Positions 38,881-64,000 of a stretch of 64,000 nucleotides of DNA are shown in pieces. Under the pieces are notes generated by a model. That model ran no database searches. It was given only the letters and a program-made list of their open reading frames with translations, and had not been told where the DNA came from. Source of the stretch: Paragordius varius (Eukaryota > Animalia > Nematomorpha). The position numbers and the translations under genes were made by a program. Numbering within the stretch: position 1 is the stretch's first letter; the number at the start of each line of letters is the position of its first letter. The DNA is taken from the NCBI GenBank assembly GCA_964247055.1, contig OZ176051.1:11284001-11348000 (forward strand), written 5' to 3'.

Positions 38881-41055
38881 GTGTATGGCATTGTTACGTA
38901 TTCAAATTTGTTAGATTTATATTTTTGTATGTATAATACAAATTGTAGTGATGATATAATATATTCATATTTTTCATTATCATGCAAATAACGTCTCTAT
39001 TAGTTTACTATATTTTAGTATGTATCAGGCAAATACGGTCAATTTTTGTATTAAACATGCACACGTTTTACCTGGGCTTAAACATGTAAATATTATATGC
39101 ACAAAAAGTATATAAACATCGCAAATATTACATAGTTTTTTTTGTGATTTATCTAAACAAATCTTATTGTTTTATGTTACTCGATTCACTACATTTGGCA
39201 CGGTTTTATCTCACTCCATTCGCGCACGGAAAAATTAAGTCTGGGAGCATATGATTTCGCAACTAGCTTTGATGAATATATCGATTATATAAATAGAATG
39301 TTAAAAGTCAAATTAATTGATGGAAAGGATGAAATAAAAAAGTTTGTTATTGGCCTGCATCGGTCTATCCCATATTCCAAAGTTGAAGAGATTCATTTAT
39401 CCCGTACAGTTAGAGGAAGTGGGGTGGGATGCTTTGGTAGCAGCTGGAAAAAAATATTCACTCCGCAATGTGTTTGCAACCAGGTTCCAGTTTACGCAAC
39501 TACGCGGGGAAGCCACGAAATCAGTGATGGATTTTTTGATTCGGGTAAAGGGTGTGGACAGGTGCGATTTTGGGCAAATTGCAATGCTAAGAACCAGAGA
39601 TGGGTTTGTTGGAGGGCTACAACTCAAACGATTAAAAATAGAACTGTTCACGAAATTTCCAGTTGCAATGTTTGATCGGAAACCTGTTATGTTGGAGATG
39701 GTGATAGAAGTGGCAATGGCGTATGAAACGGCGGATAGTTTATTGAAGAGGGCTCTGACAATAGAGTTGATGATAATAAGAAAGAAGTGTGGAAAATGTG
39801 GGTACGATGCGATCAACTGGTGTCCCGGTTCGAACAAAAATGTTACCGATGCAAAGGACGAGGTCATTTTGGCAGGTGTTGCCGGCGTAATATAGTGAAT
39901 GGTAACAATATTAATAAGGAAGCCCGCACGCAAGCAAGTCTGAATGGTCATTGGGTGAGGGTGGTGTACGATACCGGAGATCAAATATCATTGTTTGGGA
40001 AAAGCATGTGGCTGGAGATTGAAAGACCGGCCTTAGCACCCGCGGATCCAATACTTGGTTCAACCATTAAGGTGTGGTGGTGATGGGGCAATGTGTGGTA
40101 GATGTTAAATGAAATGGTATCGTCAAGCAGCTGGAATGTCTGGTTACCATGGAGGATCGGGTAATCTTTTTGGGTTACTATGGACAAGTTTTTAATGTAG
40201 ATTTCCAGATGCTGTCTGTGTAAAAAAGTTAGTGGTGTGGATTTAAATAAATTTAAAGAATTGTTTTGTGAGGGTATTGGGTGCTACACGGGACCACCCA
40301 TCAAGTTGTTACTCAAAAAAGGTAGTATCCCAAAAAATCCCGCTTCCGTCCAAGGTGATAAGGGAATAAAAAAGGCTTGAGAGTCTGGGTATCATTGAGG
40401 CCATAAACCCGTCACAATCACGAATTGACTGGTTAACTCCGTTGGTAATAGTTAAGAAGAATAAAATGATATTATATTTGCATACGTGGTGATTATAGGG
40501 TTACTGTTAACCCAAGTTTTGTTTAAGTCGATCATTTGATTCCAACGTTTGATCACTTAGTGTTAAAAATTAGGGAAATGTTTTTACGACCCTAGATCTA
40601 AAACCTACTGGCAAATGCACCACGAAGAATATCAACATTTACTGACGTTTAGTTCGCATACAGGTCTTTTCAAGAGACTTCCATTTGGAATTTCTAGTGG
40701 CGAAATATGGATGAGTTATTAAAAGATTGTCCAGGTACGGCGGTTTACTTAGATGATGTAATTGTTAGTGAAACTACGGTAATGAAGCATAAGGATAACT
40801 TAGAAAAGGTTTTGAACAAATTAGCTGCTAAATTTGATATTAAAAAGGATAAAATCCAATTAGCTCGTTCTTCAGCATCCTATTTAGGATGTATAATTTC
40901 AGACAAAGGAATTAAACATGATGAAAAGGTAAAAGCAATTTTGAATTTCCTACACCTACCAATATGACATCACTCCGGTGTTTCTTGGTTTTAGATGGGA
41001 CCACAAGTAACGTGAGATGAAGTAAAAAAGGATTAATTTATTGTATATGTTTTTG

Positions 41056-41057
<2 letters not shown>

Positions 41058-41110
<53 letters not shown>
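41058..41110. repeat. (TA)n microsatellite; others near 9340, 20650, 47470 and 50965
   Basis: Directly visible dinucleotide runs. Confidence 0.95.
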
Positions 41111-41114
<4 letters not shown>

Positions 41115-41722
41115 ATTTGCACTTCAAGAGTGTCCTTGAACACTTCAAGTTGGTCCTTGAACACTTCAAGTTGGTCCTTTGACTTTTTTTGTTTTGTTTT
41201 AAACTTTTATCAATTAAATCGTAAATAATTTATCTATTTTATTGTTTTTAATCTATTTGCTATTATTTAACATAAAATTTAAATCGATATCAACTTTTAA
41301 TCTTTGAGAAACCGTATATCTTTATTAATTTCTTAAAATAATTTTGGATATTTATAAGATTTTAACACGAAATGAAAAAATATATAAGTTTCCTGGGTTA
41401 TTAATTTAAATTTTTCATCAAAAACATTTGAAAGTCAATAATTTTGTTTAATTGAAAAAAAAACAGTTTGAAACAAAAAAAGTGGTTTTTCAATAAAATT
41501 TTTTATTTTTAAATGAATAAATATATAATAAATAAAGAAAATTAGGTTAATAAATAATAAAATAAAAAAATAAATGCAAAAATTATGGTAAAATCAAAAT
41601 TTATAAATTTTAAGGACCAACTTGAAATGTTCAAGGACCAACTTGAACTGTTCAAGGACCAACTGGAATTGTTCAAGGACCAACTTGAATTGTTCAAGGA
41701 CACTCTTAAAGTGCAAATGGTA
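41111..41722. mobile_element. Intact 612-bp TACC-family MITE inside the (TA)n tract of the inner 3' LTR
   Basis: TA|TACCATTTGCACTTCAAGAGTGTCC...GGACACTCTTAAAGTGCAAATGGTA|TA. The sister LTR at about 47470-47500 has the (TA)n tract without it. Confidence 0.92.
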
Positions 41723-44218
41723 TATATAATATAATCAGGTAAGAATATATTCACATATACTAAGGTGAAATGCTTGCCTTTCTACAGTTTATTCAAAGGT
41801 ATAATAATAATAGTAAAACGTGGAATACTAAAAACATAAGTTACGAGGTTAATCAAATAGTTTAATATAAGATTCATTCACACTGTCAGTTACCACTATA
41901 ACACCACTACCCCCTTCTTACGAAAGCGGACGGGTTTCTGACGAATTCTTGTCGGGTACCGTCTTTCCTGTATTTTTGTGGGGGAGCTGGTTGTCGCAGG
42001 TTCCTTAGTATTATTATTATTATTTAGACTTTCGACTGTCGGGGTAATCGGTTCGGTTTCGTTACTTGGTTTGATAGTGCTGTTTGGTTGAGATTCGGCA
42101 TTTGTATCATCCCTGACAGTGGTTACGTCCTCATCACTTGTGTTGCGGGAAGTGGTGGTTTGTTGTTGTGGCTGGTGTACTATTTGATCGGCGTGTTTAC
42201 TCACGAGTTTCTCTCGGTCTTTGTCCCACACCTTGTATGAAAATAACCCTGTACGGTCCGTTATCTCTCCGGCGCGTCAGCCTGGACTTAGTTTTTTATT
42301 CATTACTGGGTCATTAATCGCAAACTGCCGTCAGGGGGCTGGTGCATCTAACAATCTCGCTCTATTATTTAACCAGGTTAAGGGGGTATGGGGTGTTCGC
42401 TTTAACATTAATTCGGCCGGGGTTTCTTTAGTTGTCGAGTGTATAGAGTTTCTATACGCCCATAGTCTAGTGTTAAACGCTTCGTGGGTGATTATCGCAT
42501 TATTTTTTATTCATTGTATTTAATTTTTATCGTACTTACTATTTCTACCATCCCATTACTCTTAGGATGGTAGGGGGTAACCTTAACATGTTTCAACCCT
42601 AACGTACTTAGGGTAACGTGAAGTACCCATTGCTAAAATACGAAGCATTATGGCTAACGATCTCTCTTGCATAACCACACCTTGCAAACGTTTCTTCTAC
42701 TTTATGGATTATATTCGCTGCGGTTACTTTTTTAAAATAAACCCTTCTGCCCATTTAGAGGCACTATCAATAATCAACAACCAATAATAACCGTCTCCCG
42801 GTCTGGCTATATCAATATACGCTCCCAGACAGCAACATTATGATCCCACTGATAAGTAGAATTCTGAGTTACATTCGGCCTACTACGTTAGCACGATTCG
42901 CAGTGACTACTAGCTTTTACCAGGTTATTTTCTAATTCTGGCCAATAACACGTAAATCTGGCCATCGCTCGTTTGACCACTGTGTAGGTTTTTCACCACC
43001 TCTTTTTGGAGGAGATGGAATTAGAATCCGATCATTTAAACTTAACAAGCCATATTGATATGCCAACTCGTCTTTACGGTTTACAAACTTTTCTAATTCT
43101 GGAGAACTCCAGTTATGGTTGTTTAACGCTTAAATTATTTTTTGTAATATTGGATCTGATGCGGTTTCTTTTCGAATTTCTTCTCTGCTTAAGAGCACGT
43201 TATGACAATCAAAAATCTCAGGTATCTGGTAACCGCATAATCTTCATCATAGGCATCGATCTCGTCAATCGGCCATCTCGATAAATAATCAGGTCTATTT
43301 TGAGCCCCCTTTTAATGACTTATTTCAAAATCATATTCATTTATTACATTAATCCATCTTAGTGCTTTAGCATTATGTATTTCTTTTAAATTTCGATCTC
43401 TATTTATTAACTTTACTAAGTGTAATTGGTCAGTTAATATTACAAATTTTCTACCATATACGAAACTATGAAACTTTCTTTAACGCAAAAATATTGCTTT
43501 TAATTCCTTCTCGATAGTGGAATAATTCCGTTTGGCGTTGCTACATTTTTGTGAGGCGTACGCGATCGGTATCCTTTCACTATTAACCTCATTTAAAATG
43601 CATCCAAATCCTAAATCTGACGCAGTTTGTATTATCAATTTTATTCGGATTATATGGTGTTAAAAACACTTTTTCCCTTAAAGCTGCTAACCAGCTCTCG
43701 GTCCAAGACCATTTCGTGTTTTTACTAGTTAATTCATGTAAGGGGCCGACTATCATTTAAAATTTTGGTATAAAACGTTCATGAAACGTCCAAAAACCTA
43801 AAAATACTACGTAATGACTTTTTATCTACCGGCCTTTTTAGTTCCTTAATTGATTTTGCTTTTACATGGGTTTATACCCTTTTTAGATATTTCAAACTCT
43901 AAATATTACTGATTCTGCACATATCATTATTTTATATTGTCTTATTTTGAATCAGGTTCTATCGAGACGACTTAATACATTATTTAAATTGTTAATGTGC
44001 CCATTTTCGTCCTACCAGTCACTAGGACGGCATCTAAATATACGCAAGTTCTCGGACTTTCAGCCAGCACCTGTTCCATCACCCGTTGAAAGATGATGGG
44101 TGCCGTGGCCTGTCCAAACGGTATGCGTTTGTATTTAAAAAACCTTTATGTATTGACATAGTTAACAATTCTTGACACTCCTCTGTGACTGGCATCTGGA
44201 GGTAAGCATCTTTTAAAT

Positions 44219-45892
44219 CAGGGCTTCTAGAACTATGGGTCGGTAGCAAAATTATGGGGTCGCGAGCGATAAAAATACAATTCAACAAAAAATGTTTTTT
44301 AACTTGTAAAATTATTGTTATAAAGAAAAATAACATTCATCATATATAAATATATCATAAAATCTTCTGGTTCGGAAAGACTGTTTATACCAGCATTTCT
44401 ATTCCGATCATTATAATCTATATATTTATAAAAATGGAAAATGCTGGCTTTGTGATCTGTTTCCGGAAACCCGGAAGACATAATCCAAATATCGAAACAA
44501 TATAATCATTAATGAATGCCCCGACAATAGCTTCCCTTTTTTGAATTAGGCCCCCAGTTCGGGCCCACCCGTGTAAAAAACGAGTTTTTTTGAAACACAG
44601 TCCACAAAAATCGTGTCTTTGAGACAATTTTCCGGAGAACGTGTTGGACTATTTGATTTCAATGATTTTTTACTTTTTTTCGAATACGCCGTACATAGTC
44701 GGCTGGCTTTTTTAATTTAGGCCCTCTTTTTACCCGTTCTCTCGTAAAATGCCATTTTTTTCAAAAAAAACTAAATATTTTGCCCAGTGTATGAGACCGT
44801 TAAAATTCACTGAGGATTCGAGTTATTCTCTGTTAAAAGGAAAAGATTTTAGTCTTGAGTTTATTTAATTTTGGTTGCTGGGTAAATAGATAGCCGCTAA
44901 AACGTGCTACTATATAGAAATTGCGTTGTTTTGGAGCTAATTTACAGAAAAATTATAAAGCCATATGAGCTCATTAAAAGCTAATATTACCCGTAATTAG
45001 GTAAAAATTAAGGCCGAGTTCTTTCATTAGCCGTTAATTTGGGGCCTTTATGCCCTAAAACGCCATCTTATAACGATTATTTAGTGTTGAGGTATTTTTT
45101 CGAATAACCCATGAGACGATAGTATCAAAGATGATTCCGAATATTTGCCCTATAAAGGCAAAAAATTTAACTCAGCGCTTTTTCCATATAGGTCTATGGG
45201 TAGGGGTCTACCGGTTACTGAGACGCTATACAAAGGCGTAGTTTTGGAGATAATTTTCAAAAAACTTAAGAAGCCATACGAGTTCAGTTATACACATTTC
45301 TGGGGAATTTGTATAATATTATTCTTTCCTTTAAAAAGGGACCACAAATGATTTACTTTTTATATCCCTTGATCCCACTGTATGAACACAATTTCAAATT
45401 AGAGCTTTTAACCATGAAAACGAAAATCTTAAAATAAATCCAATGATAGTTGAATATTAACTTTAATAACAGATTAAATATGGTCAATTTCGAGTAAACA
45501 ATATTTCAGCCTATGCAAAAACCCGTAAAAGAATAAAGACATTCTTTTTATTAAATATGTTTATAATTATTTTTTTATTTCCATTAACTCTATTTATTGC
45601 AAATTATTAAGAATAATTATCGGTGAGACTACGCCACACGGAAGCGTGACAGGGCCAGCTGGTATCTTGTATAAATTTACTATGAACCAGAAAATTTTAT
45701 AGAAATTTATAAAAAATGTAGATTTATTTTTCTCAGTCTCTCAAAACCGAAATAATCCTGATAAATATTATCAACAAAATTTCTAAGTGTTATTTCGAAG
45801 AAACTATTATTTTTCTTTTATATTTGTTAGGGTCTTTAAGAAACTCGCAATCATAAATGGGGTCTGGAACTACAAAAGCTTAAGAAGTCCTG
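44219..45892. mobile_element. Non-autonomous hAT element inserted in the inner Gypsy RT
   Basis: TIRs CAGGGCTTCT / AGAAGTCCTG and a perfect 8-bp TSD TTTTAAAT (44211-44218, 45893-45900). RT sequence resumes on both sides. Confidence 0.88.
44417..45662 (+). mobile_element. Non-autonomous Helitron inside the hAT element
   Basis: A|TCTATATATTTATAAAAATGG start; cacg-gaag-cgtg hairpin, then acagggccagCTGG|T; no TSD. Confidence 0.8.
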
Positions 45893-47465
45893 TTTTAAAT
45901 CAATGTGAGACCTTCGCCTATTTTCGACACCAACTCATCAAACTTTGGGATTATATGCGAGTCTTCTTGCAACACTTATTAATCGTTACCCGAAAATGAC
46001 TGCATATTCTTAATTCGCCATTCGGTTTAAGTTCATTAACCGTAGGCGTGGCCTATTTCACAGTGTAATGCTAGAATCAACCGGTTCTAAGTTGCCTAAC
46101 TTTTGTGGCCTTGTCAGCTCTTTCTCTACCTTTTCTCCTAATGGAAAAGGCACCCTGCGACATGGCCATACATTCGGGATCGCATTCGCTGCAATGCGAA
46201 TTTTTACTGTGTCTTTATAACACCCTAACTTATTTTCGAATAAGTTTTTAAAATTTTCGCAAATCTCATTTAATTTAAGATAATTAATTTTAACCTGTGG
46301 CATCTCAATCGGAACTTAGCCATCCCCATAGTTTTGCTCAGGACACAAACAAATGTCTCCCATCATTTGTTTGCCGTTTATCTCAACGTTAATGCTTGCC
46401 ATCCTCATCATTGGAACCGTTGTGTTGTTGTACGATTTTACCGGCGACGTCGGTCGTATTTTGGGTTTGCCTATTTGTTCCCAAGTTGTAAAATTTATTA
46501 CACTGATATCTGACCCGGTATCATAGATGAAATCTTTTCTCAGACCGTTTATTTTTAATGTTTAAATAAGGTGTTTGAGCTATTCGACATACAGTGACAT
46601 CCTTCAATAGTTGTCTATTGAAGTAAGGTTTTTGACTTTTGGCTACGCACATCCTAACAAAATGGTTCAATTTGCCGCATTTGTTTCACGCTCGTTTCCA
46701 GGCTGGACATTTGTTGGGTGGGTGTGTAGTGCCGCAATGTTTGCATGCAGTAGAGGATTTTATTATTGTTTGTCGGTAGGGTTTATCATGTTATAACCGA
46801 TTGATATTATTATTACTGTTACTATATTATTCTGTAGTCCATCCCTAGCAGCTTCATGTGCTAGTGCGAGATCTAAGATTGTTTCTAATGGGTTATCAAC
46901 GCATCTGGGTACCTGGAATAAATATCCATCTCAAGTTGGGGTTGTCGTAGTCCAATTACGAACGCATCACGTATACGCCGTTCCATGGCTTCAGTGAATT
47001 GGGCTTCTTTTGCGCCTATATTGACACGTTCAAGATGCGTGAAACTTTCACCATCGTTGCGTACCAGCCTAAAAAATTTAAACCGGCTTTGGAATTTCGA
47101 TTTCGTCGGGTTAAATATTTTTTCCCCTTTCCGTAATTTCAGTCCACGTGGCGTCTTTTATTTTTTTAGGGTATGTGCGTTGGTTAATCTTTCTCACAAT
47201 CATGAATCCGCCATATGCTAGTAAATTTGATTTAAGCGTTTTTTCGGTTACCGGAATATCCTTTGCCTCAAGCACCTTGCTAAACTCGAGGTAATCATCG
47301 AATTTATTATTATCATTGTAATTTTCTATGGATAGATTGCGTTAGGAGCTGCTATATTCATTGGTTCGTCTGTCATTGCGTCTTGGCTACCAATTTTAGA
47401 TGGGGCCACAAGTAACGTGAGATACGGTAAAGGATTAATTTTTTGTATATACTTTTGTTATATAA

Positions 47466-47504
<39 letters not shown>

Positions 47505-49959
47505 CAGCTATGAATGTATTCACAGGTGAAATGCTTGCCTTTCTACAGTTTATTCAAGAGTATAATAATAATAGTAAAATGTGGTGATGGTTAATTTAAT
47601 AATAAATACTACGAACATAAGTTACGAGGTTAATCTAATAGTATATATAGTATAAGGTTCATTCACATTAGCCTGTCAGTTACCACTATAACACTTGGTA
47701 AGGTTGAAATTTCACGCTCGTTATATTCCATCTTTGCATGCTACGATCGCGGATTTACAAGCGCTCACAGTGGTCGACAAAAGAAGATATACTTTTTAAT
47801 AAAAAACTGTTAGTGAGTGAGACCTTATGTCTAACAACGTTTAATCCGACCATTGGTGTTGGAAACAGACGCATCGAATGACGGATTCGGAGCAGTCTTA
47901 TCACATATGACAAATAATGGAAAACGGCCGATAGCTTTTACGTCTTGAAAATGTGCGAAAGTAAAACAGCATTTCCCTGTGAATGAAAAAGAAGCAAGAG
48001 CAATTTTATAAGCGCTCGAAAAGTTTAAAATGCTTATGTAAGGCAAAAGGTTCGCATTATTAACCGATCATAAACCACTAATCAAGTTGTTTGGCTAGAG
48101 ATATCTGAGTAATCTTAACAATAGTAGATTATTAAGATGAATACTCAGAACAGCCGATTATAATTTTAATATACAATATATTAATGGTTCATAATATTTG
48201 GCGGATTGTTATTTCGTCTTATGAAGAACCCACTGAGGAGGTTTAGGAGCAAGCAACCAGTAGGCAGATCAACTTTTTAACAACAAACAACTTAAACGTA
48301 GGGGGAATTAAAGAAAATACTTTAAGAGATGAGTTTGGCATTAAAAGCGGCGTTACATCATAATGATTGGTCAGCTACAATTTTAAATTGGTTATTGATT
48401 ATTAGAAACGAAATAATCAAATAAGCTGCTGTATTTGAACGATCGTCCTTTTATTCCCAAACTGTACGCAATGAAAAGGTTAAATTTTTGCATGTTGGAC
48501 ATTCGGGCAAATGCAATGAAAGAGTCTGCCAAGGCTAGAGTTTATTGGCCAGGAATAAACCAAGACACTGGAATTAATGTGAGATCTTCTAAGGAGTGTC
48601 AGTTAAACCGGAGTAACATAAAAAGCAATCGCATTTACAAATGAAATTTCAATACGGGTATCTGGAAACGGATACATCTCATGATTGTCGGTCCTGTAGA
48701 TGGGTTTTATTGGTTAGTGACTATAGATAGTAGCTCCAGATGGGTTGAAATCGAGTTGCCAAGAAATGGTAATTCCACAAACAGTGACATTGGTTAGAAA
48801 TTTGGTGCGTAAGGTATGGGTTTCCGAGAATGAGTTACCGATAATGCATCATATTTTGCATCAAAGGATTTTGAAGATACCTTGCAACGAGCGAATATTC
48901 AACATGTCACCCCTGCCCCTATCATCCACAAACAAATAGGAATGAACGTGTCATTTACACCTTAAAAGCACACTATAAATCGCTAACGGATTCTAAACTG
49001 CTTTCTGACAAAAAAATGAATCAATTGTTATGAGGTCATCGCTCTGCCTTATATAGCGCCACAAAAGGGTGCCCGTATAATTCCTCAAAAGAGATATTAA
49101 TACCCCTTTCTCATGGGTTAGAGAAACACCTTCGGAACAATTAAATGACGACATCCATCAAAACCAAGTTTTCACATGGGACGAATCTATTATGATTTAA
49201 AATCCTGTCCGTCGGACAAGATTTTAACACACATAAAAAAGGAAATCAATACGGGATGGAGAAAAGGTTCAATTTTGGAGAGAACAGAGTTTTTCATGGT
49301 AAAAATGGAAACCAAACCCTTCGCAATCATGCAGATCAATTACAGCCGACGGCGCCGAGAAGAGCGGAGAGGGGGTTGATGGTGGTCTAACGATAAACCA
49401 AACTGATGAATGCAATATAACAACCAATAATTGGAAAGTGGGGAGGAACAATGCAAAGAAAGGAAAACGAGAAAGACCCCCAGGTCGAAATGAAAACAGA
49501 AAAGACAACTGATAAAGAACCAGAAACAAGATATCCGCTTAGGGGAAGAAAAGCGCTAGATCGGCTCGGATTCGGATAAGGAGAGATGTTAGATTTGAAT
49601 ATATCAGTTTTATGCCTTTGAATAGACAAACTTATATGGATTTGAATACATCTTTTATAGACCATCTAGTATTGGGATTACTCTTGTATTAAACATGCCC
49701 ACGTTATTTTACCTTAATGTAAATATTATATACACAAAAAGTATATAAACATCGCAAATTTTATATAGTTTGTTTCTCGAGTCATCACATTTGGCTTATC
49801 TCATTACACTCGCGCATGGAGAATTAAGTCTGTAAGCATATCATCCTGCAACTAGCTTTGATGACTATATTGATTATATAAATAGAATGTTAAAAGTCAA
49901 ATTAATTGAAGGAAATGATGAGAGAAAGAATTGATAGAAATTTATATAATTACGGTGGT

Positions 49960-52612: not shown

Positions 52613-55600
52613 ATGGTAATCAGCAAAAGCGCATTTCGGGATGTTTTGAAAGTTGTTGCATTGTTTGATTTTTTTCCTCAAAATAACGATGAAGTTACAA
52701 TATATTAAATATGCAGCTTAAATTTACTAAGGGTAGTTATATTACAATCGTTCAGGCTCCTTCATTGAAACAAATTGGGACGGATAAATATGAATACGAT
52801 CAAAACGAATGGTGGGAAGGCAACTTAAACGGAGTTGTGGGTTGGTTTCCATGCAATCATGTTGAAATTTTACCAGGAAGTAATAAAAAAATATATTCAG
52901 ACATTTATGCAAATGATTTATCTACGAACCTTGCAACGTGCGAAACCGTAAAATTTTATTTTAACGCTTGTTAGATTTATAAAAATTGTTTGAATCAAGA
53001 ATCCGACATTTTAAATAGACTCCATGAATTATTAAGGAAATATTTGCGTCCATTATACAATGCTCATATTTTAACTCTGCAAGAATATCAATGTTTATTA
53101 TCTAATTTAGAACACATAGCCATTTTTCATGACAAATTTTTCGAATTTGCTAAGGATATTTGCAAGTTTTTTTTTAATTTATTAACAAAGTCAAAATATT
53201 GATGATCGATTAATAGGCTCGTTTTTTCTAAAAGTTTACAATCAGTTATCCACACTTTTGAAAATCTATTGTAAAAATCATCCCAAAGCTCTCAAAATTA
53301 TATCGAATACTAAAACGGATATTGAATTATTTTTGCAAACCATAGAAAAAGGTGAAAACATATATGTTTTATTATGGGTAATATTTAATACATATCTTGT
53401 AATTATTCATGTTTTAGAGATGTCTAACTTGATTTTCGTGAAGAATTATACTTTTTATTGTTGTTTAAACAATTCTAAGCTTTTATTTTATGGCTAAAAA
53501 TGCACATGTTAAAAAGTTTTTACAATATAATATTTATCAAAACACTTAACGCATACAAAAAACAAAACTAGGGGATCTAACAATACAACCAAATGTTTCT
53601 CTAAATTTTCGCTACTTTGTATATAAGAATCATGGATATTTCATTGCATATGATCGAAAAATTAGATTGTTAAATAAAAGCCCACCAAATAGTTAATAAA
53701 AGTTTTACATATCCTAGCATTTAAAACTTTTGATACAATAAAGGGGAGATTGGTGGTATAAAAGGAATTTAGAATACGATTGGTTAAGTGAAATTCTGGT
53801 ATGTGGTGTCTTGCAATAACTTTCTCAAAAGTTATCGGTCTTTACATTATATTGTAATGAGTAACTTCAAGGGACTTTTTATAAACTTATTAAAAGGAAA
53901 TCAATCGTTTTCAACATTTATTATAATCTTCAAGATATATTAGTTTACTCGCGTAAATCTCGTGCTGCTACGCAGCCCGAGAGGGGAGGGGCTATTTGAA
54001 AAGGGACAGTAAATTGATCCACCTATGTGGATTCTTTCGAAACATTATTTAATAGCTGTGATCTTATAGGAATTTTAAAACGGTGCATTCACACTCATAT
54101 ATTGTTCAATTGGAGGAAAAATAGATTCAAAAAATTATTTTTGTGGATTTTGTTATTTTGAAAAAAATGGCGTATTACGGGGGGAGCGGGTAAAAAGAGG
54201 GCCTAAATTAAAAAGAGCCGACTATGTTTGGCGCAATCGAAAATAAGTAAACAAAAATTATATTTTAAATTGAATGGTCCAACACGTTCTCCGGAAAATT
54301 GTCTCATAGACACGATATTTGTGGACTTCTGTTTTCAAAAAAAAACGTTCTTTACACGGGGTAGGCCCGAACTGGGGGCCTAATTCAAAAAAGGTAAGCT
54401 ATTGTCGGGGCATTCATTAATGATTATATTTTTTCGATATTTGGATTTGAATGGGTCTACCGGTTTTCCGGAAACAGATCAAAAAGCCACCTTTTTTATA
54501 ACTATATAGATGTGTTAGAAATTTTTACGTTAGCTTTATACTATTCGATTTCACTTTTTTAAATTATTTTTTTTAATAATATTATAATAATTAAAACAAA
54601 TTTTTGTACACAGCATATGATACAAAGCAATATATTTAAATTCACAGTTTTCGAAAGCATTATATAATCTATGCCCACAGAGTTTAATACTATGTGAATT
54701 AGCCTAAAAGTTAAAGTTTATATGCACCGGTTAAATCGATTTGATTCCTAAGAATTTAAAATACAATCGGGGGGGGGAGTTTCGGTTTTTTTATTTACTA
54801 TTTGAACTGGTTCTATTTTGGTTTCAGCCTTTTCCTACTAATTTTCCTTCATTTTTATTATAATTTGAACCAAATTATCAAAAACAATTGTAAATCAAAA
54901 CATAATTTATTCGAAAAAATAGCCAAATTTACAAAGTAGATTATTAGTGTATGCTATCAAGCTATTCGGTCGTCAGATTACTTCTTAGATCTAAAATATG
55001 AAATTTAGCGTGGTAAAGTTTTTTTCATGTTGTGAGCCGTAAATCTACCGTTAATATAATATTATATGATGAAATTTGAAAATTATAAAGGCAAATATTC
55101 ATGATCTATATATATAAAAAATCTATCAAAATAATTTTGCGGTTTTCTTTAAGTGTTAAAGGTAAATTTAAAAACATTTCAAATGGGTGCATGAAAAATT
55201 TTATCATATTGATCATCTATTTTAATATTTAAACAAAATTAGGATTGATGATTCCAGCCTGATGGGGCATTAGAAAAAAATGTTATTGTGTACAATCAAT
55301 ATTTAATAATAATTTAAACAATAAATTTTATATTTTTATTTAAAATATAACTATATAGGAACCACTTATTGTGGTGGTGAAACACAAAACGACTGACATT
55401 ATACGGTTTCAACAGTAACCGTATATTTAAAAATGAAACCAGGGTAATTCCAGCCCAATGGAACCGGTTTTCGAATTCTCAGGAACCGAATTTCGGTTCT
55501 TTGTATTATATGTGTTTTACTGCATTTACCATAAATTGTATTTAAATATTTTCGCCGGGACAATGATTTTATTATGCTATATATTAGACAAATCCCTTAC

Positions 55601-58600
55601 CTATATTTGGCAAATGTTTTGTTCGGCATTAAGTTTACCATTTAGACACACTGAAAACTATCGGAATACATTGTGGGAATTGAGACGTTTACTACCCGTA
55701 TTATCTTTACAAATTTATTATATTTCATCATTTTATGCCAAATATTTTACACCTTTTTTTGTGAATGTGCAGGAAAATCATAAAGATTGTGGTAACATTC
55801 AAAGAGCATTAGAATTGTATGGGAATCTTATAGTAAAACTTTTTTATTATATACCATTTCCCAGTCTAAATAAACGTTTTCCCAGTCAATCGAAACGTTT
55901 TCCCAATCAATCGAAACGTTTTCCCAGTCAATCGAAACGTTTTCCCAGTCAATCGAAACGTTTTCCCAGTCAATAGAAACATTTTCCCAGTCAATAGAAA
56001 CATTTTCCCAGTCAATAAAAACATTTTCCCAATCAATAAAAACGTTTTCCCAGTCAATAAAAACGGTTTTATTTTTGATGATAAATATCAAAACAAGATA
56101 GAAAAATAACTTTTAACCGTTATTAGCGTAATATTAGGATATTATTTTTTATGAATTAACAATCATTGAATGAAAATATTTTTTTATATTCCAATACTTA
56201 ATCATTAATAATTTATTCTTTAAGAGCTATATTTTATGAACTGGAAGAATATTTTATGGTTTTTAAGTATTTTATGAAAATATTTAATAAGTTTTTTATT
56301 TTATAGTTGGTTCGCATTTATATTCGAGGCTAACTTTTAAAGTCTATAGTTACGGATAATAAAATTTATAAAAATATACCATTTTTATCTCAAATTGGTT
56401 ATTTAACGCTTCATATGGGGTCTCAAACATAAATTTTACCCTATTTTTATATTTATCATATGGTTCATCGGAGGCCTAAGAAAATCTTAGTAAAATTCAT
56501 ATTTCTTACGCTATTATTCTGAATGAGTTTATAAAATTGACAACGAATTAAAAAAATATATTGTGTTTGTACTTTACAGTCTTATGTCTAAGATCGAATA
56601 AATTATTTATGAATGTCCTTATATAATACGAATACGAAACGCCGTGCTTTTTGGGTTAAAAATGCGGCCCGCAAAGCCATTGTGTTAGAATATCCTTTTT
56701 TAAAAAATATTTTTGAATGAAAAACATATTTAAAACCATGTTTTGTTCAGATTTTTTCCGACAGTATACCATTTCCCAGTCTAAATAAACGTTTTCCCAG
56801 TCAATCGAAACATTTTCCCAGTGAATCGAAACGTTTTCCCAGTCAATCGAAACGTTTTCCCAGTCAATCGAAACGTTTTCCCAGTCAATCGAAACGTTTT
56901 CCCAGTCAATCAAAACGTTTTTCCAGTCAATCGAAACATTTTCCCAGTCAATCGAAACAATTTCCCAGTCAATAAAAACATTTTCCCAATCAATAAAAAC
57001 GTTTTCCCAGTCAATAAAAACGGTTTTATTTTTGATGATAAGTATCAAAACAAGATAGAAAAATAACATTTAACCATTATCAGCGTAATATTAGGATATT
57101 ATTTTTTATAAAATCACAATTATTTAATGACAATATTTCCTATATATTCCAATACACAATCATTAATAATTTATTCTTTAAAAGCTATATTTTATTAACT
57201 AGAAGAATATTTTATGGTTTTTAAGTATTTTTAAGAAAATTTTAATAATTTTTTTATTTTATCGATGGTTTGCATTAATATTCGAGGCTAATTTTTAAAG
57301 TCTATAGTTACGGATAATAAAATTTATAAAAATATACCATTTTATCTCAAATTGGTCATTTAACACTTCAAATTGGATCATAAACATGTCTTCGAATTGT
57401 GTAAAAAATACTGTCGGAAAAAAATTTGAACAAAACATGGTTTTATATATGTTTTTCATTTAAAAATATTTTATAAAAAAGGATATTCTAACACAATGGC
57501 TTTGCGGGCCGCATTTTTAACTCAAAAAGCACGGAGTTCCGAATTCGTATTATATAAGGACATTCATAAATAATTTATTCGATCTTAAACATAAGAATTT
57601 TTTTATTCGTTGTCAATTTTATAGACTCATTAGAATAATAGCGTAAGAAATATGAATTTTACTAAGATCTTGTTGGCAAATTTTTGCATTGGATTTCCAA
57701 ATTTTTCGCGGGCCGCAAAAAGATTCGGAAGGCCGCCTTAGGCTGCGATGAACCAAATGATAAATATAAAAAATAGGGTAAAATTTATGTTTAAGATTCA
57801 ATATGAAGTGTTAAATGACCAATTTGAGATAAAAATGGTATATTTTTATAAATTTTATTATCCGTAACTATAGACTTTAAAAGTTAGCCTCGAATATTAA
57901 TGCAAACCATCGATAAAATAAAAAAATTATTAAAATTTTCTTAAAAATACTTAAAAACCATAAAATATTCTTCTAGTTAATAAAATATAGCTTTTAAAGA
58001 ATAAATTATTAATGATTGTGTATTGGAATATATAGGAAATATTGTCATTAAATAATTGTGATTTTATAAAAAATAATATCCTAATATTACGCTGATAATG
58101 GTTAAATGTTATTTTTCTATCTTGTTTTGATACTTATCATCAAAAATAAAACCGTTTTTATTGACTGGGAAAACGTTTTTATTGATTGGGAAAATGTTTT
58201 TATTGACTGGGAAATTGTTTCGATTGACTGGGAAAATGTTTCGATTGACTGGAAAAACGTTTTGATTGACTGGGAAAACGTTTCAATTGACTGGGAAAAC
58301 GTTTCGATTGACTGGGAAAACGTTTCGATTGACTGGGAAAATGTTTCGATTGACTGGGAAAACGTTTATTTAGACTGGGAAATGGTATATTTTATTCGAC
58401 ATGTTTCCAATTTGAAGCGTTAAATAACCAATTTGAGATAAAAATGGTATATTTTTATAAATTTTATTATCCGTAACTATAGACTTTAAAAGTTAGCCTT
58501 GAATATAAATGCGAACCAACGATAAAATAAAAAACTTATTAAATATTTTCATAAAATACTTAAAAACCATAAAATATTCTTCCAGTTCATAAAATATAGC

Positions 58601-61600
58601 TCTTAAAGAATAAATTATTAATGATTAAGTATTGGAATATAAAAAAATATTTTCATTCAATGATTGTTAATTCATAAAAAATAATATCCTAATATTACGC
58701 TAATAACGGTTAAAAGTTATTTTTCTATCTTGTTTTGATATTTATCATCAAAAATAAAACCGTTTTTATTGACTGGGAAAACGTTTTTATTGATTGGGAA
58801 AATGTTTTTATTGACTGGGAAAATGTTTCTATTGACTGGGAAAATGTTTCTATTGACTGGGAAAACGTTTTGATTGACTGGGAAAACGTTTCGATTGACT
58901 GGGAAAACGTTTCGATTGATTGGGAAAATGTTTCGATAGACTGGGAAAACGTTTATTTAGACTGGGAAATGGTATATATTTTCTATATTCATATTATGCC
59001 TTATATACCATATTGTGTGATTCTTAAATTTTTTAGAAAGATTTACAAGAACTAAGGAAACAAAGTGAATTGGAACAAGATATATTGAGTGGACCGATCG
59101 AGGGCTTAAACCAAGAGGTGTGTACATTTACTTTTTCTACGTATCTATCTTAAATAATCACCTTTACAAAATTAATCGTATCATTTTATATAATAAAAAT
59201 AATAAAGGAATTTCAAAATATGGGCACTGAAATTGCATTTATCCTTAAAATAACGATAAGAAGTCGATTTTTACCACCTTCGTTAGATTCGGCTGAGGTA
59301 ATCACATTTTTGGAAAAATTAACTGACAACCTCTATTCTACCACTACCTCACAAATATATCAAAACGCAACAGAACTATCCAAAAAAGATGAAAACTTTG
59401 CGAATTATAATAGCGAACAAGTTATACTAGTTGGTTTCCCTGATATCATTCTTATGTTGTCCTGTAATGCCATGTTAAACGGTTTCGTGTTTAAGGTTAG
59501 TTATAGAATTTTATTTAAAAAAAATTATTGATGCATATCCTGTTCTAAGGATGTGTTAATTTTAAAAATTCTATGAGTAAGATTTTTAAGACAGATATTA
59601 TATTTCTATTATTATATTAGCCACAACATATTTATGTATCTCAAATTTTTTGTTAACAAAAAGTTTTTATGTTTTGGACTGCAAACATGCACAATAATAA
59701 AATTTTATTCTACTATCTGACAATTATATAGTAAATTTTTATAAATTTCTTATGGAAAGATATTATTTTCTTCTTTGAAAATTATTCATAAGTTGTTTTA
59801 ATTTAAAAATGTTTTAAAAATTTTGATGAGGGTAAACAAATTTATGTAAATAGTATTTTATACTTTTTTCTTGCCTAATATAAAATCAAAATTTTTTATT
59901 ACTGACATATATCGAAATAATATATAATTAACAATTATTTATATTTACAATATCATAAGTTTGCACCTTTTTAATAGATTAATTTTATGCAAAATAGGGG
60001 AAAATACCAATGGCATTTCTTTCTGTCGAATCATACAATGTTAAGGACAAAGCTTTTCTTATCATATCAAGTAATTCGTGTAAAATAAAAATTATTAGGC
60101 CAAAATGTATGGATTTGTTTTAATGTCTTATTAGAAATTATAAAGTACACGTAAAACGTAACACAAATGTTAAGGCAACCATACTTGTAAAAATCTTATT
60201 TTTTTAAATTAACTATTGTTTTAATAACGATGAGATGTCAATAACAACACTTTATTAACATTCAATTGCGAATATTTAAGTTTAATATTTAGTTTTTAAA
60301 AATATGGCTGGCTATCTTTATAAAAAATATCTGTCTTATAATTCTAATTTTTGACTGATGTTTTAATTTTAGGTCCCCTGATTGAATCCATTGTGGGTGA
60401 ATGTGAAAACAATCAAGATGCCCAAAAAATCATGGCACATTTCAATGTAAAAATCGAAAATTCACCCAAAAAAGAATTAGGACATGATATTTTACCGAAA
60501 AAAACTGATATTTGTAGTGACGAAGGTGTTTGTCTACGGAAGGTTTTTTTTCATAACATTATATGAAATATTTAGGCTTATAAAATCTATTTTTCACTTG
60601 TGATAAGTTGTAATTAAATATATAAAAATTATTTAATTTAGTGATATTCACTTTATCAGAATATATAAAGCATTTTCAAAATTATATCATACCACACTCA
60701 GTTATAACTTAATATCTTACAGTTAAAATTACTATTTTGATTACAATATTAATTTATTATCTAAGAATTTTAAATACCACCACACAAATATAGGACAATC
60801 GTCCCACAGTTACGGCACACAAGCTTAGCCCAAACATTCAATCCATAAATCAAAGTCATAACGTTAAACTCAGTCCTCCACCCATTAGTTTGGCAAGACG
60901 CAAAAATTTGAGCTTATTTCGCAGCGCTCATCATGCAAAGTAAAATATAATATCTGAAAATGAATTTAAAAATGAAATTTATGCGTTTTTTTAAAGACAA
61001 TAAGTGCTTAATAAATTTTTGCTGAAAAAAAAGAGTTGTGTGGAATCCTTTCCTTATTGTTATATAATATCGTCTCTAACAAGATTCCCAAACAACATTG
61101 TTTTGATAAAATGGGATCACAGTTTATAAACTAACATCCACAACAGGAGGGGTGTCCAACACAAATGACTAGATTTTTCACAAATTCAAAGAGCCACATT
61201 TGAATTAATATCAAGACATAAGTTTCAAATAAATTATTATATAAACTTATATAGATGTGTTAATTTTCATATAAATAACCAGAAAATTTTTTATAATATT
61301 GCTTTGCTGTTAAATATGATATAATTAAAAAATTAAGTTTAATTTATCCATGGATTTCATCAATTTCTTGTTTTTACACATTGATGAAAGCACAAATATA
61401 GATATCACAAGGAATTTTATTCGAGAAAATGTTTTCAAAGAAGACAACTTAAACTTACCCCACTTTAACTGCTGAACTGTGTTTAGCTTGCAATTTTTAA
61501 ATATCTTAAAAAATATTTAAGAAATATATGTATGGGCTACCGAGGAATCTTTTATAATTGTAATAAAATAAAATCCGACGTTTTATATAGATATATTGAA

Positions 61601-64000
61601 ACGATACTGCTTGTTTCACTTAAATTATGTTCCTTTTACAATGACCAATTTGAATAGAAATTTAGTTATTTTTATATAATCATCTGTTTTAAGGCGTAAA
61701 CAATTTAGAGTTCTATTCATATTAATATCAAATTGGACATAAATAATATTAACAAAAACTTTATTAAATAAATTAAATAAATATTTTTCTATTGCATAGT
61801 AATTATAGAGATGATTTGACGAATGAAGTAAGGTTGTCAAATTAATTTCTTTTAATCACTGAGAAAATAAATTAATTGAAGAATTTGATGATATCATAAT
61901 TGCGGACCAAAATCCTATCAGAGCCCTATTTAAATGCCATTTTTACTGCTTATATTTAGCTTTTACTAATTATATTTCAAGTTACTAAGCCAAATATTTT
62001 TAAATATGCGAAAAAACACATTCCAAAGATTTTGAGATTGAAAGGAAATAAATGAAATGAATGTGATGGAAAATAAAAAATATATCAAAAATTTTACATC
62101 GCCACTCAAAAATTTATTTTTGCAAAAAAAAATTTTGAATTTTTTTTAAAGAGCCACTCAAATTTTTTTAAAAGACAAGTTGCTCCGAAACCACCTGTTA
62201 GACACCCCAGATCTACAAGATAGATATTTTCTATTCTTGTTTTCTTTAAGATAAATAGAAAAAGCAAATAATATGGTTAGCAGTCTAGTAAATATCGTTT
62301 ATTTTGTAAACGGTTCCGAAAATCGCTCTTCCAATCAACTTATATTCTAACCCATATAAAATTTTTCAATCGCCTAGAATTTCCCCTTCAAACAAGAATG
62401 ATGTAATTATGAAAGAATCTAAAACGCACGCTTTCAAAGCGCCAACATTCTCACAGAATAACTCTTCTTTGGTGCTTGATCATAGTTTTTTAACCGAAAA
62501 TTTAAAGTCAATTAAGAATAATAATAATAATAATTCACATCTCCTTGGTAATGCATATGACAGCTTATATACTTCTAATTCATCTCCCGGTTCCTCTATT
62601 TATGCCGCCAGTTCAATACCAGATTTTGCTCAAGAGGCCAACGAAAGGTTTATATAATATACTGACTGTGAATAATTCCTTTAAGTATTCATATAGTATA
62701 TGTTTTATATAAATACCATTTAGAGTTCAAGTTCACCCTAAAAATAAATTATGTGTTTTTGAACTAATATAACAAATTATTAATATGAAATATATCTTTA
62801 TAGCATAGTTTATTATTTTTTCAGTATTATTTTATTTTAAACAAAATTTTTATCTTTTAAAAATGTATAAAAATTAGGTATTTAATCCTCAACAACTTAT
62901 ATTTTATTTGAGGTTGAATTTGAATTGTATATGGTATATTAAAAGGTTTCATTTCCCTTTTTAAACATTAGATTTAGCTTTATTTTATCCATTTATTATA
63001 ATAAAAAATTGGTTAATTTAAAAATAATTATTATATAATTACGATATATATTCTGTATCAGTTATTTTACTAATTTTCATACAAAAGCTAAATTTATTCG
63101 TTTTATAATAAATTATTGTAGTATTAAATATTTTTAAACATTTAAATTTTTTAGCACCGAACAAACCAATGGTATGATAGAAAAGGGACATACCGAACCA
63201 TTATATACCGCTGCACGTTTAGAGAGTAATTTTTTAACATTTAATATCTAACAGCTTTATGTTTGAATACATTTTAAATTAAAATTTGCTAAATGATGGC
63301 TTTTAATGTATATTTAATATCATTTCAAAAGAATAAAATTATAATTATTTGTGAATATGCATTCTAATTGAAACAGTAGATTATAATCTAATCATATATT
63401 TGTATGGTTTGAAAATGTACATATTTGTTTTATTTTATCAATGCAATTATTTAATATTATTTATTATTTTTTATAATTTAGATGTTTCCAATTCTAATAC
63501 TCAACAAACGATTAATCCTATAACGACGATAAATAATATTGACAATGGGTCAAATAAATATAATCAAGTTTTATCCGAAGATGAGACCACTCAAAAACAT
63601 GCATTATTAATTAATTATTTGAATGAATTTATACCTGAATCTCTTTGCTTACCTTTACCACCTATGGGTCCAACCTTTTTGGGACATCAAAATCAAACAA
63701 ATGATACATCAAATAGCGATAAAAATTATGGTAAAGTTTTATTAAATATTTTTAACTATCGGTATTCTATTTTATTGTGGTACAAAAGAAGCAAGGAAGT
63801 TTATACCTTATATATAATGCTTCATTAATCTGTTTGAATGATAAACATTTGCATTTTATCTTTCAATTTACTATTCATATCAATATTATATATGTTAAAC
63901 AATATTTTTATTTTTTAATTTGATAATTTTCACAGAGAATGGATATTCATGCATCATTGAAGCTATTTTAAACCATGAACATACAGATATTAATTCAGAA
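52613..64000 (+). CDS. ARHGEF7: PIX-family Rho guanine nucleotide exchange factor (SH3-DH-PH), runs off the window. Exons: 52613-52693, 52717-52947, 52975-53165, 53191-53351, 55588-55697, 55773-55832, 59037-59117, 59208-59495, 59998-60070, 60373-60525, 60642-60700, 60794-60939, 62378-62647, 63155-63171, 63482-63730, 63936-64000
   Basis: SH3 ALFDF...DE-LKFTKG..WWEGNLNGVVGWFPCNHV; DH YCKNHPKAL, LSLPFRH..Y...L.EL, LRKQSELEQDIL; PH FPDIILMLS...GFVFKGKIP..PLIESIV; late IIEA motif resembling the PIX GIT-binding region. Start codon and the exons after 60525 are less certain. Confidence 0.88.
53948..54510 (-). mobile_element. Short non-autonomous Helitron in ARHGEF7 intron 4
   Basis: A|TCTATATAG start at 54510; decayed ctcgtgctgc hairpin and CGAG (from CTAG) end. 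Single-unit relative of 9377-11108. Confidence 0.8.
55852..58974. mobile_element. Outer TACC-family foldback (cgttttcccagtcaatcgaaa 21-mer subfamily)
   Basis: TA|TACCATTTCCCAGTC...GACTGGGAAATGGTA|TA, with arms of about 560 bp that mirror each other. Confidence 0.93.
56767..58387. mobile_element. Inner copy of the same foldback inserted into the outer one
   Basis: Same termini and TA TSD. Its central region is the reverse complement of the interrupted outer centre. Confidence 0.93.
62714..62936. mobile_element. Degenerate TACC-family MITE in an ARHGEF7 intron
   Basis: TACCATTTAGAGTTCAAGTTCACCC...GAGGTTGAATTTGAATTGTATATGGTA|TA; interior like 31289. Confidence 0.75.

What the first reader, a model, noticed from the sequence alone, without database searches (positions are those of the whole stretch)
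52694..52716. 23-nt intron that splits the SH3 domain of ARHGEF7
Seen: GAA|gttacaatatattaaatatgcag|CTT. Unspliced, the frame hits TAA. Removing exactly 23 nt joins ALFDFFPQNNDE to LKFTKG, the standard SH3 DELxF motif. Established: introns this short are far below the size typical of animal spliceosomal introns; they are known mainly from ciliates, a nucleomorph and dicyemids. Inference: this animal has a spliceosome that excises introns of about 23 nt.
Basis: partly seen in the sequence, partly recalled or inferred. Interest (0 to 1): 0.75.

Follow-up and report, generated by a model that had tools for sequence, protein, structure and literature searches.

The report
Real 23-base intron, hairworm PIX gene
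The 23 bases are almost certainly a genuine, very old intron that has shrunk to 23 bases in this horsehair-worm-type genome, which points to a third animal lineage with introns under 30 bases, though no RNA could be examined.

Summary
Observation confirmed. At 52694-52716 a 23-nt GT...AG segment separates two open frames; read through, it hits TAA. The upstream exon starts at ATG 52613 and ends NNDE. The downstream exon starts LKFTKG and matches Pfam SH3_2 from profile position 16.

Decisive evidence is comparative. The closest relative, Gordionus sp. 'ARHGEF7-like', has a 40-nt GT-AG phase-0 intron at exactly this codon boundary. Bombus impatiens ARHGEF7 has a 74-nt one there.

The next two introns of the gene (27 and 25 nt) also sit at Gordionus intron positions with the same phases (39 and 5970 nt there). 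A 75-nt intron matches a 902-nt one.

Tiny introns also occur in the chitin synthase gene of this window (23 nt) and in GMPPB on another chromosome (20 and 25 nt). They coexist with 62-75-nt and kilobase introns.

U1 and U2 snRNAs are canonical. Long zero-loop mitochondrial hairpins and the Gordionus kinship indicate a nematomorph.

A 2026 survey reports sub-30-nt animal introns only in myxobolid myxozoans and Dicyema. The papers I could search say nothing about hairworm intron sizes.

This scan had already noted the same class elsewhere in this genome. No RNA was available for this locus, and I ran no joined-exon search.

The parts
52613..52693 (+). Exon 1 of the PIX (ARHGEF6/7-like) gene: start codon plus the first SH3 strand, ending NNDE.
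   Evidence: Translation. Residues 16-27 align to Gordionus P0154 residues 91-102. The N-terminus MVISK... parallels the MVINK... start of Gordionus RefSeq isoforms X1, X3 and X4.
52694..52716 (+). The finding: a 23-nt GT-AG intron, phase 0, 22% G+C, with an in-frame TAA if retained and a TTAAA branch-like motif 7-9 nt before the AG.
   Evidence: It is orthologous to the 40-nt intron L004:4769-4808 in Gordionus and to the 74-nt intron L043:570-643 in Bombus impatiens.
52717..52947 (+). Exon 2: the rest of the SH3 domain and the linker.
   Evidence: Pfam SH3_2 E=3e-8, profile positions 16-54. PDB SH3 hits include ARHGEF6/7. It aligns to P0154 from residue 103.
52948..52974 (+). Second tiny intron: 27 nt, GT-AG, phase 0, ends in an in-frame TAG if retained, TTTTAAC motif.
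   Evidence: Same position (16 residues before HELLRKYL) and same phase as the 39-nt Gordionus intron.
52975..53165 (+). Exon 3: start of the DH (RhoGEF) domain.
   Evidence: Pfam RhoGEF profile 6-57. The only PDB hit is the PIX DH structure 1BY1. 55% identity to P0154 residues 183-242.
53166..53190 (+). Third tiny intron: 25 nt, GT-AG, phase 2. It is the only GT-AG solution that joins the two frames. TATTAAC motif.
   Evidence: single solution. Same position and phase as the 5970-nt Gordionus intron.
53191..53351 (+). Exon 4: middle of the DH domain. The 3' end is tentative.
   Evidence: Pfam RhoGEF profile 67-123. PDB hit 1BY1. Aligned to P0154. The donor at 53352 is the only GT in the right phase for the acceptor at 55587 (my reading).
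53352..55587 (+). Long intron of about 2.2 kb (boundaries tentative) that carries a dispersed repeat. Gordionus has no intron here.
55588..55697 (+). Exon 5: DH segment ...CSALSLPFRH...RRLLP.
   Evidence: tblastn with P0086; sequence.
55698..55772 (+). Ordinary short intron: 75 nt, GT-AG, phase 0, with no in-frame stop.
   Evidence: Same position as the 902-nt Gordionus intron, with similar first bases.
55773..55832 (+). Exon 6: end of the DH domain.
55833..59036 (+). 3.2-kb intron holding four arrays of a 21-nt tandem repeat, two in each orientation.
59037..59117 (+). Exon 7: linker between DH and PH.
59118..59297 (+). 180-nt intron; the acceptor is tentative.
59298..59495 (+). Exon 8: PH-domain segment. 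Later exons (about 60348-63800) were not resolved.
   Evidence: tblastn to P0086 residues 402-458. The orthologue's PH region hits the ARHGEF6 PH structure 1V61. Pfam itself finds nothing in this exon.

Best explanation
The 23 bases are a genuine U2-type (GT-AG) spliceosomal intron, the first intron of a PIX-type RhoGEF gene (SH3-DH-PH) in a nematomorph-like animal.

It is an ancient intron. It lies in phase 0 between the E and the L of the SH3 motif NNDE|L, and is 74 nt in a bee, 40 nt in the hairworm Gordionus and 23 nt here.

Inferred mechanism: the major spliceosome recognises the GT, an A in the TTAAA stretch 7-9 nt upstream of the AG as branch point, and the AG. There is no polypyrimidine tract, and only about 13-15 nt lie between the 5' splice site and the branch. 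The U1 and U2 snRNAs of this genome have canonical recognition sequences.

If the intron is retained, the frame hits TAA after four codons, so unspliced RNA gives no SH3-DH protein from ATG 52613.

The intron belongs to a class of 20-27-nt introns. These lie at the 5' ends of the two genes mapped from the start codon (PIX, GMPPB), beside 62-75-nt and kilobase introns.

Shown: the sequence, the frames, the homology, the orthologous intron positions and the snRNAs. Inferred: the excision itself, the branch point, and how common the class is.
For: Sequence and frames.

Domain continuity: SH3_2 starts at profile position 16 in exon 2. Exon 1 ends at residue 102 of Gordionus P0154 and exon 2 starts at residue 103.

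Orthologous introns: Gordionus L004:4769-4808, 40 nt, GT-AG, phase 0, after AAT AAT GAC GAA. Bombus L043:570-643, 74 nt, after AAT GAC GAG.

Neighbouring introns of 27 and 25 nt lie at Gordionus intron positions with identical phase.

Other tiny introns: chitin synthase, 23 nt with TACTAAC; GMPPB on chromosome C4, 20 and 25 nt, needed to read the conserved N-terminus.

Canonical U2 GTAGTA and U1 ACTTACCTG.

The locus is single-copy, with no intron-less copy.
Against: No transcript, cDNA or same-species protein spanning the junction was found, so excision is not directly shown.

The 5' splice site GTTACA is weak. The branch motif TTAAA is only a loose fit to yUnAy.

Other in-frame GT-AG pairs exist. 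Donors at 52652 or 52655 give 65- or 62-nt introns, within this genome's usual short-intron size range.

My annotation-free scans of 264 kb showed no excess of 20-30-nt GT-AG junctions over control dinucleotides. I attribute this to lack of power.
Confidence: 0.9

Rival explanations
1. The real intron is larger (62-74 nt). It runs from an upstream donor (52643, 52652 or 52655) to the same acceptor at 52716, so the ALFDFFPQNNDE stretch is intronic and the SH3 lacks its first strand.
For: These pairs are in frame. 62-75 nt is the common short-intron size in this genome.
Against: The skipped stretch is conserved in frame with Gordionus (7 of 12 identical) and with Bombus ALFSFKGKNNDE. It ends exactly at their exon boundary. 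Intronic sequence would not stay conserved at this divergence.
Confidence: 0.04
2. The 23 nt are not removed in the main product. Transcription or translation starts at ATG 52711, inside the segment, giving a protein that begins MQLKFTKG with an N-terminally truncated SH3.
For: An ATG-initiated 87-codon ORF starts at 52711. Gordionus RefSeq isoform X2 likewise starts inside the SH3 (MTNFLKGD...).
Against: It does not explain why exon 1, with its start codon and SH3 first strand, is conserved directly upstream. At most this is an additional isoform.
Confidence: 0.04
3. Assembly indel or decaying pseudogene: the 23 nt are an artefact or a disabling insertion.
For: A 23-nt frame-breaking insertion is what either would look like in isolation.
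Against: The segment has GT and AG ends and lies exactly at an orthologous intron site. Eight exons are stop-free and conserved. The same pattern recurs in other genes.
Confidence: 0.01
4. Non-spliceosomal excision of the IRE1/XBP1 type. That intron is 23-26 nt in animals (from my own knowledge).
For: The length coincides.
Against: There are no twin stem-loops: the fold of 52670-52745 is weaker than its shuffles, z = +1.7. The ends are GT-AG at a conserved spliceosomal intron position.
Confidence: 0.01

Closest known systems
Ultra-short spliceosomal introns of myxobolid myxozoans and Dicyema japonicum (PMC13644364)
   Same: Animal GT-AG introns of 20-27 nt at conserved intron positions between conserved exons. 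Splice signals are reduced to little more than GT and AG. An A-rich stretch lies upstream of the AG. U2 is canonical. The hosts are parasitic.
   Different: The lineage is different (Ecdysozoa: Nematomorpha-like). In those species the median intron is 22-27 nt. In the loci I read, tiny introns sit beside 62-75-nt and kilobase introns in a repeat-rich 110-Mb assembly. In the two genes mapped from their start codon they are the 5'-most introns.
Orthologous intron in Gordionus sp. m RMFG-2023 'ARHGEF7-like' (XP_065313359 etc., GCA_954871325.2) and in Bombus impatiens ARHGEF7
   Same: Identical codon boundary (NNDE|L), phase 0, GT-AG.
   Different: 40 nt and 74 nt instead of 23 nt. The smallest intron of the Gordionus gene is 39 nt.
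Ciliate tiny introns (Paramecium about 25 nt, Stentor 15-16 nt; PMC5014332, and cited in PMC13644364)
   Same: Similar length. Retention gives a premature stop: all three tiny PIX introns do so.
   Different: Those are unicellular lineages in which essentially all introns are tiny.
PIX / ARHGEF6-7 RhoGEF family
   Same: SH3 directly followed by DH and PH. The best structural relatives are the PIX SH3, DH (1BY1) and PH (1V61) domains.
   Different: There is no CH domain. Pfam detects no PIX-specific C-terminal domains in the hairworm orthologue. The SH3 carries an insertion of about 10 residues shared by the two hairworm-type sequences.

Membership tests
U2-type GT-AG spliceosomal intron | GT at the 5' end and AG at the 3' end | tested here: met
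   52694-95 is GT and 52715-16 is AG.
U2-type GT-AG spliceosomal intron | Removal restores a continuous, homologous reading frame | tested here: met
   Exon 1 ends at orthologue residue 102 and exon 2 starts at residue 103. SH3_2 profile continuity.
U2-type GT-AG spliceosomal intron | Position and phase shared with introns of orthologues | tested here: met
   Gordionus 40 nt and Bombus 74 nt, both phase 0 at NNDE|L.
U2-type GT-AG spliceosomal intron | Branch-point motif (yUnAy) upstream of the 3' splice site | tested here: inconclusive
   Only TTAAA lies 7-9 nt before the AG. The sister introns have TTAAC or TACTAAC. The branch site was not mapped.
U2-type GT-AG spliceosomal intron | Absent from the mature mRNA | not testable with these tools
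   No same-species transcript or protein was found.
U2-type GT-AG spliceosomal intron | Canonical U1 and U2 snRNAs in the genome | tested here: met
   U2 at 177.7 bits with GTAGTA; U1 at 124 bits with ACTTACCTG.
Animal ultra-short-intron genomes (Dicyema, Myxobolidae type) | Introns under 30 nt at conserved positions | tested here: met
   Six cases of 20-27 nt in three genes. The chitin synthase case also allows 41- or 44-nt solutions.
Animal ultra-short-intron genomes (Dicyema, Myxobolidae type) | Median intron length under 30 nt genome-wide | tested here: not met
   In the loci read, most introns are 62-75 nt, hundreds of nt, or kilobases long. The sample is small.
PIX / ARHGEF6-7 | SH3-DH-PH order, with PIX domains as the nearest relatives | tested here: met
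   Pfam SH3 and RhoGEF hits. PDB 1BY1 is the only hit for both DH exons. The orthologue hits 1BY1, 1V61 and the PIX SH3 structures. Its relatives are all ARHGEF7/PIX.
PIX / ARHGEF6-7 | PIX-specific C-terminal regions (RhoGEF67_u2, betaPIX_CC) | tested here: not met
   Pfam does not find them in Gordionus P0154, although they are present in mollusc and arthropod relatives. The window's 3' exons were not resolved.
IRE1/XBP1-type unconventional intron | Twin stem-loops at the two cut sites | tested here: not met
   The fold is weaker than shuffles, z = +1.72.
Nematomorpha (source organism) | Long inverted repeats in the mitochondrial genome (PMC10380579), and closest protein relative a hairworm | tested here: met
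   On C44: 131-nt and 97-nt arms with no loop, and repeated 52-nt palindromes. The only full-length relative of exon 2 among 1.84 billion representatives is from Gordionus. The species was not identified.

The most novel reading that the evidence does not exclude
Hairworms, or at least this species, are a third and so far unpublished animal lineage with spliceosomal introns under 30 nt. The 20-28-nt introns form a discrete class, found at the 5' ends of the two genes checked here. They coexist with 60-75-nt and kilobase introns, so one canonical spliceosome would handle two very different size regimes. Standard gene finders would then mis-model many genes, which could inflate reported gene loss in Nematomorpha.
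Probability: 0.5. Interest if true: 0.75.

Novelty: new member of a known kind. Interest (0 to 1): 0.6.

Why it matters
A survey of 51 animal genomes published in September 2026 found introns under 30 nt only in myxobolid myxozoans and Dicyema, and predicted that more lineages would turn up (PMC13644364). This locus gives a clean, homology-anchored case in an ecdysozoan: the same ancient intron measures 74, 40 and 23 nt in a bee, in Gordionus and in this animal.

Here the tiny introns share genes with ordinary and very long introns. That makes the animal a natural test case for how small an intron a canonical U1/U2 spliceosome can handle.

There is also a practical side. Default minimum-intron settings in aligners and gene finders would break such genes. 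BUSCO completeness was only 71.6% for Gordionus (10.1101/2023.06.26.546503). Whether tiny introns contribute to such low scores was not tested here.

Tried and rejected
(1) Annotation-free tests for an excess of 20-30-nt GT-AG junctions between open frames, run on the window and then on 264 kb, with and without a codon-usage score, against control dinucleotide pairs. There was no signal. The hits were dominated by transposon ORFs with overlapping frames, and the thresholds excluded even the verified PIX introns. I read this as lack of power, not as evidence against the class.

(2) Word search with exon 2 found nothing in the permitted length range.

(3) The full HMMER search with exon 2 found no same-species protein, so there is no RNA-derived support.

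(4) A COX1 fragment search to name the species gave only 70-79% identical unnamed hits among the 120 listed.

(6) Look-ups of Gordionus isoforms P0086, P0153 and P0155 and of Mytilus P0302 found no record. Only the longest Gordionus product, P0154, did.

(7) The CCT genes, examined as a further sample, showed only introns of about 70 nt and of hundreds of nt.

(8) The IRE1-type reading was rejected.

Every exon was searched separately by reference.

Full report
**Observation**

The window is AT-rich, 24-37% G+C. At 52694-52716 the + strand reads GAA, then a 23-nt segment that starts GT and ends AG, then CTT.
- The frame that opens at ATG 52613 gives 27 codons ending ALFDFFPQNNDE.
- Read through, it meets TAA after four more codons.
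- The frame from 52717 gives 77 open codons starting LKFTKGSYITIV.

The finding is exactly as described.

**What the exons encode**

I searched the exons one by one, by reference.
- Exon 2 matches Pfam SH3_2 (E = 3e-8), but only from profile position 16 onward. The missing first strand is what exon 1 encodes.
- The next two open frames match Pfam RhoGEF at profile positions 6-57 and 67-123.
- In the PDB, exon 2 hits SH3 domains that include ARHGEF6 and ARHGEF7.
- Each of the two DH exons hits one structure only, the PIX DH domain 1BY1.

**Relatives**

A full HMMER search of 1.84 billion representative proteins with exon 2 returned mostly multi-SH3 proteins. Only one protein aligned over the whole exon, P0086. 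It is from Gordionus sp. m RMFG-2023, and RefSeq names its cluster mates 'rho guanine nucleotide exchange factor 7-like'.

The Gordionus protein has SH3 at residues 89-155 and RhoGEF at 183-372. Its best structural relatives are the PIX DH (1BY1), the ARHGEF6 PH (1V61) and the PIX SH3 domains. Its next relatives are all ARHGEF7/PIX proteins of molluscs and arthropods. So the gene is a PIX-type RhoGEF. Pfam's PIX-specific C-terminal models do not fire on the hairworm protein.

**The decisive comparison**

Exon 1 of the window ends on residue 102 of Gordionus P0154. Exon 2 starts on residue 103.

The Gordionus gene was fetched as L004 and the protein mapped onto it. The exon ending ...KNNDE stops at 4768 and the exon starting LSFLKG begins at 4809. 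Between them lie 40 nt that start GT and end AG, in phase 0, after the codons AAT AAT GAC GAA. The window has AAT AAC GAT GAA before its 23 nt.

In Bombus impatiens ARHGEF7 (L043) the first exon ends ...ALFSFKGKNNDE. A 74-nt GT-AG intron follows at the same boundary.

The 23 nt therefore occupy an old intron position, at least ecdysozoan in age. This rules out an assembly indel or a random insertion.

Gordionus RefSeq isoforms X1, X3 and X4 start MVINKDF...AKALYSFKGKNNDE. This parallels the window's MVISKSAF...VALFDFFPQNNDE, so ATG 52613 is the start codon.

**The rest of the gene**

| Window intron | Length | Phase | Gordionus counterpart |
|---|---|---|---|
| 52694-52716 | 23 nt | 0 | 40 nt, same boundary |
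| 52948-52974 | 27 nt | 0 | 39 nt, 16 residues before HELLRKYL |
| 53166-53190 | 25 nt | 2 | 5970 nt, phase 2 |
| about 53352-55587 | about 2.2 kb | tentative | none |
| 55698-55772 | 75 nt | 0 | 902 nt, similar first bases |
| 55833-59036 | 3.2 kb | 0 | 179 nt, same junction (after ...LM/...LI) |
| 59118-59297 | 180 nt | 0 | 5263 nt, same junction (after ...GE/...QE) |

- The 25-nt intron is the only GT-AG solution that joins its two frames.
- All three tiny introns give a premature stop if retained.
- The 3.2-kb intron is filled with 21-nt tandem arrays.
- The 3' exons were not resolved.

**Alternatives at the site**

Sixteen GT-AG pairs keep the two frames joined. Some give introns of 62-74 nt from upstream donors, the usual short size in this genome. 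All of these delete residues that are conserved with Gordionus and Bombus. Only the 23-nt pair keeps both conserved blocks.

An ATG inside the segment (52711) could start a truncated isoform, much like Gordionus isoform X2. That would be an extra product, not a replacement.

The flanks form no IRE1-type twin hairpins. The locus is single-copy, with no intron-less copy.

**Is it a class?**
- In the chitin synthase gene of this window, a 23-nt GT-AG segment with TACTAAC joins two frames at 30721-30743. Solutions of 41 or 44 nt are also possible there. The other short introns of that gene are 62-68 nt.
- On another chromosome (C4), GMPPB reads MKALILVGGYGTRLRPLT...ALVE, then 20 nt, AGVNHIVLAV...EER, then 25 nt, LKIKI...EPLGTAG. 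Both segments are GT-AG.
- The CCT genes, by contrast, show introns of about 70 nt and of hundreds of nt.

So tiny introns are a subset, the 5'-most introns in PIX and GMPPB, beside ordinary and very long introns. My annotation-free scans of 264 kb could not quantify the class.

**Mechanism**

Five of the six tiny introns carry TTAAC, TACTAAC, TTAAA or TTAAT about 4-10 nt before the AG. The 20-nt GMPPB intron has no such motif. None has a polypyrimidine tract. Their 5' ends share little beyond GT. This resembles the reduced signals described for myxobolids and Dicyema (PMC13644364).

The genome encodes a canonical U2 with the GTAGTA branch-binding box and a canonical U1 5' end.

I infer ordinary U2-type splicing with a spacing of only about 13-19 nt between the 5' splice site and the branch. 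This is inference; no RNA was available.

**Organism**

The assembly is 110.6 Mb in 44 contigs. Its mitochondrial contig has 131-nt and 97-nt zero-loop hairpins, a feature said to be exclusive to Nematomorpha (PMC10380579). The nearest relative of the gene is Gordionus, at 45-55% identity.

Published hairworm genomes are 200-300 Mb (10.1101/2024.06.11.598342), so the species remains unidentified.

**Literature**

PMC13644364 (September 2026) reports sub-30-nt animal introns only in myxobolids and Dicyema among 51 genomes, and does not mention nematomorphs. The Gordionus genome paper and a comparative hairworm preprint never use the word intron. Other searches found nothing on hairworm intron size. 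The Cunha et al. hairworm genome paper is not in the library, so I could not check it.

Earlier agents of this scan reached the same reading on other parts of this genome.

**Verdict**

This is a new member of a known kind. Interest 0.6.

Noticed in passing
window 55857-56070, 56772-57027, 58149-58382, 58757-58969: Four arrays of a 21-nt tandem repeat (10-12 copies each) lie inside the 3.2-kb PIX intron. Two are in one orientation and two are in the reverse complement, so the intron holds a large inverted arrangement of arrays. They give long spurious ORFs in several frames.
   Followed up: partly
window 28700-29110 and 54080-54510: A dispersed repeat occurs in both a chitin synthase intron and a PIX intron. 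Similar pseudo-peptides appear in both (...GPKLK(K)RADYV.RNRK..., ...SGHSLIII.FR.LD.NGSTGFPETD.KA...).
   Followed up: no
window 30721-30743: A 23-nt GT-AG segment with a perfect TACTAAC lies in the chitin synthase gene. In-frame alternatives of 41 and 44 nt exist because the flanking residues are poorly conserved.
   Followed up: partly
window 18700-19900 and 39300-49000: G+C-richer stretches (33-37%) carry retroelement-like ORFs, including an RT-like FVDFSKAFDSI at 19524-19892 (- strand). They produce many overlapping open frames.
   Followed up: no
G000:C3:257000-528000, and C2:11950000-11990000: There are at least 46 U2 snRNA matches. They range from two identical canonical copies (177.7 bits) to clustered, progressively divergent copies (47-125 bits). 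I do not know whether any variant U2 is expressed or linked to tiny-intron splicing.
   Followed up: no
G000:C44 (L033 53-314, 773-1472, 4005-4257): The mitochondrial contig has perfect or near-perfect hairpins (131-nt and 97-nt arms with no loop) and a tandem series of 52-nt palindromes upstream of COX1.
   Followed up: partly
G000:C1:10612280-10612597: A COX1-like fragment with six stop codons sits on a nuclear chromosome. It is probably a nuclear copy of mitochondrial DNA.
   Followed up: no
window 52760-52810 (exon 2) and Gordionus P0154 residues 118-133: Both hairworm-type PIX SH3 domains carry an insertion of about 10 residues (QAPSLKQIGTDKYEYDQNE versus QAPTLVCDKEINIYESDPKD) that is absent from the bee and PDB PIX SH3 domains.
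   Followed up: no
window 53352-55587 versus L004 11304-11621: The window gene has an intron of about 2.2 kb inside a DH segment that is a single exon in Gordionus. This is either an intron gain here or a loss there.
   Followed up: no
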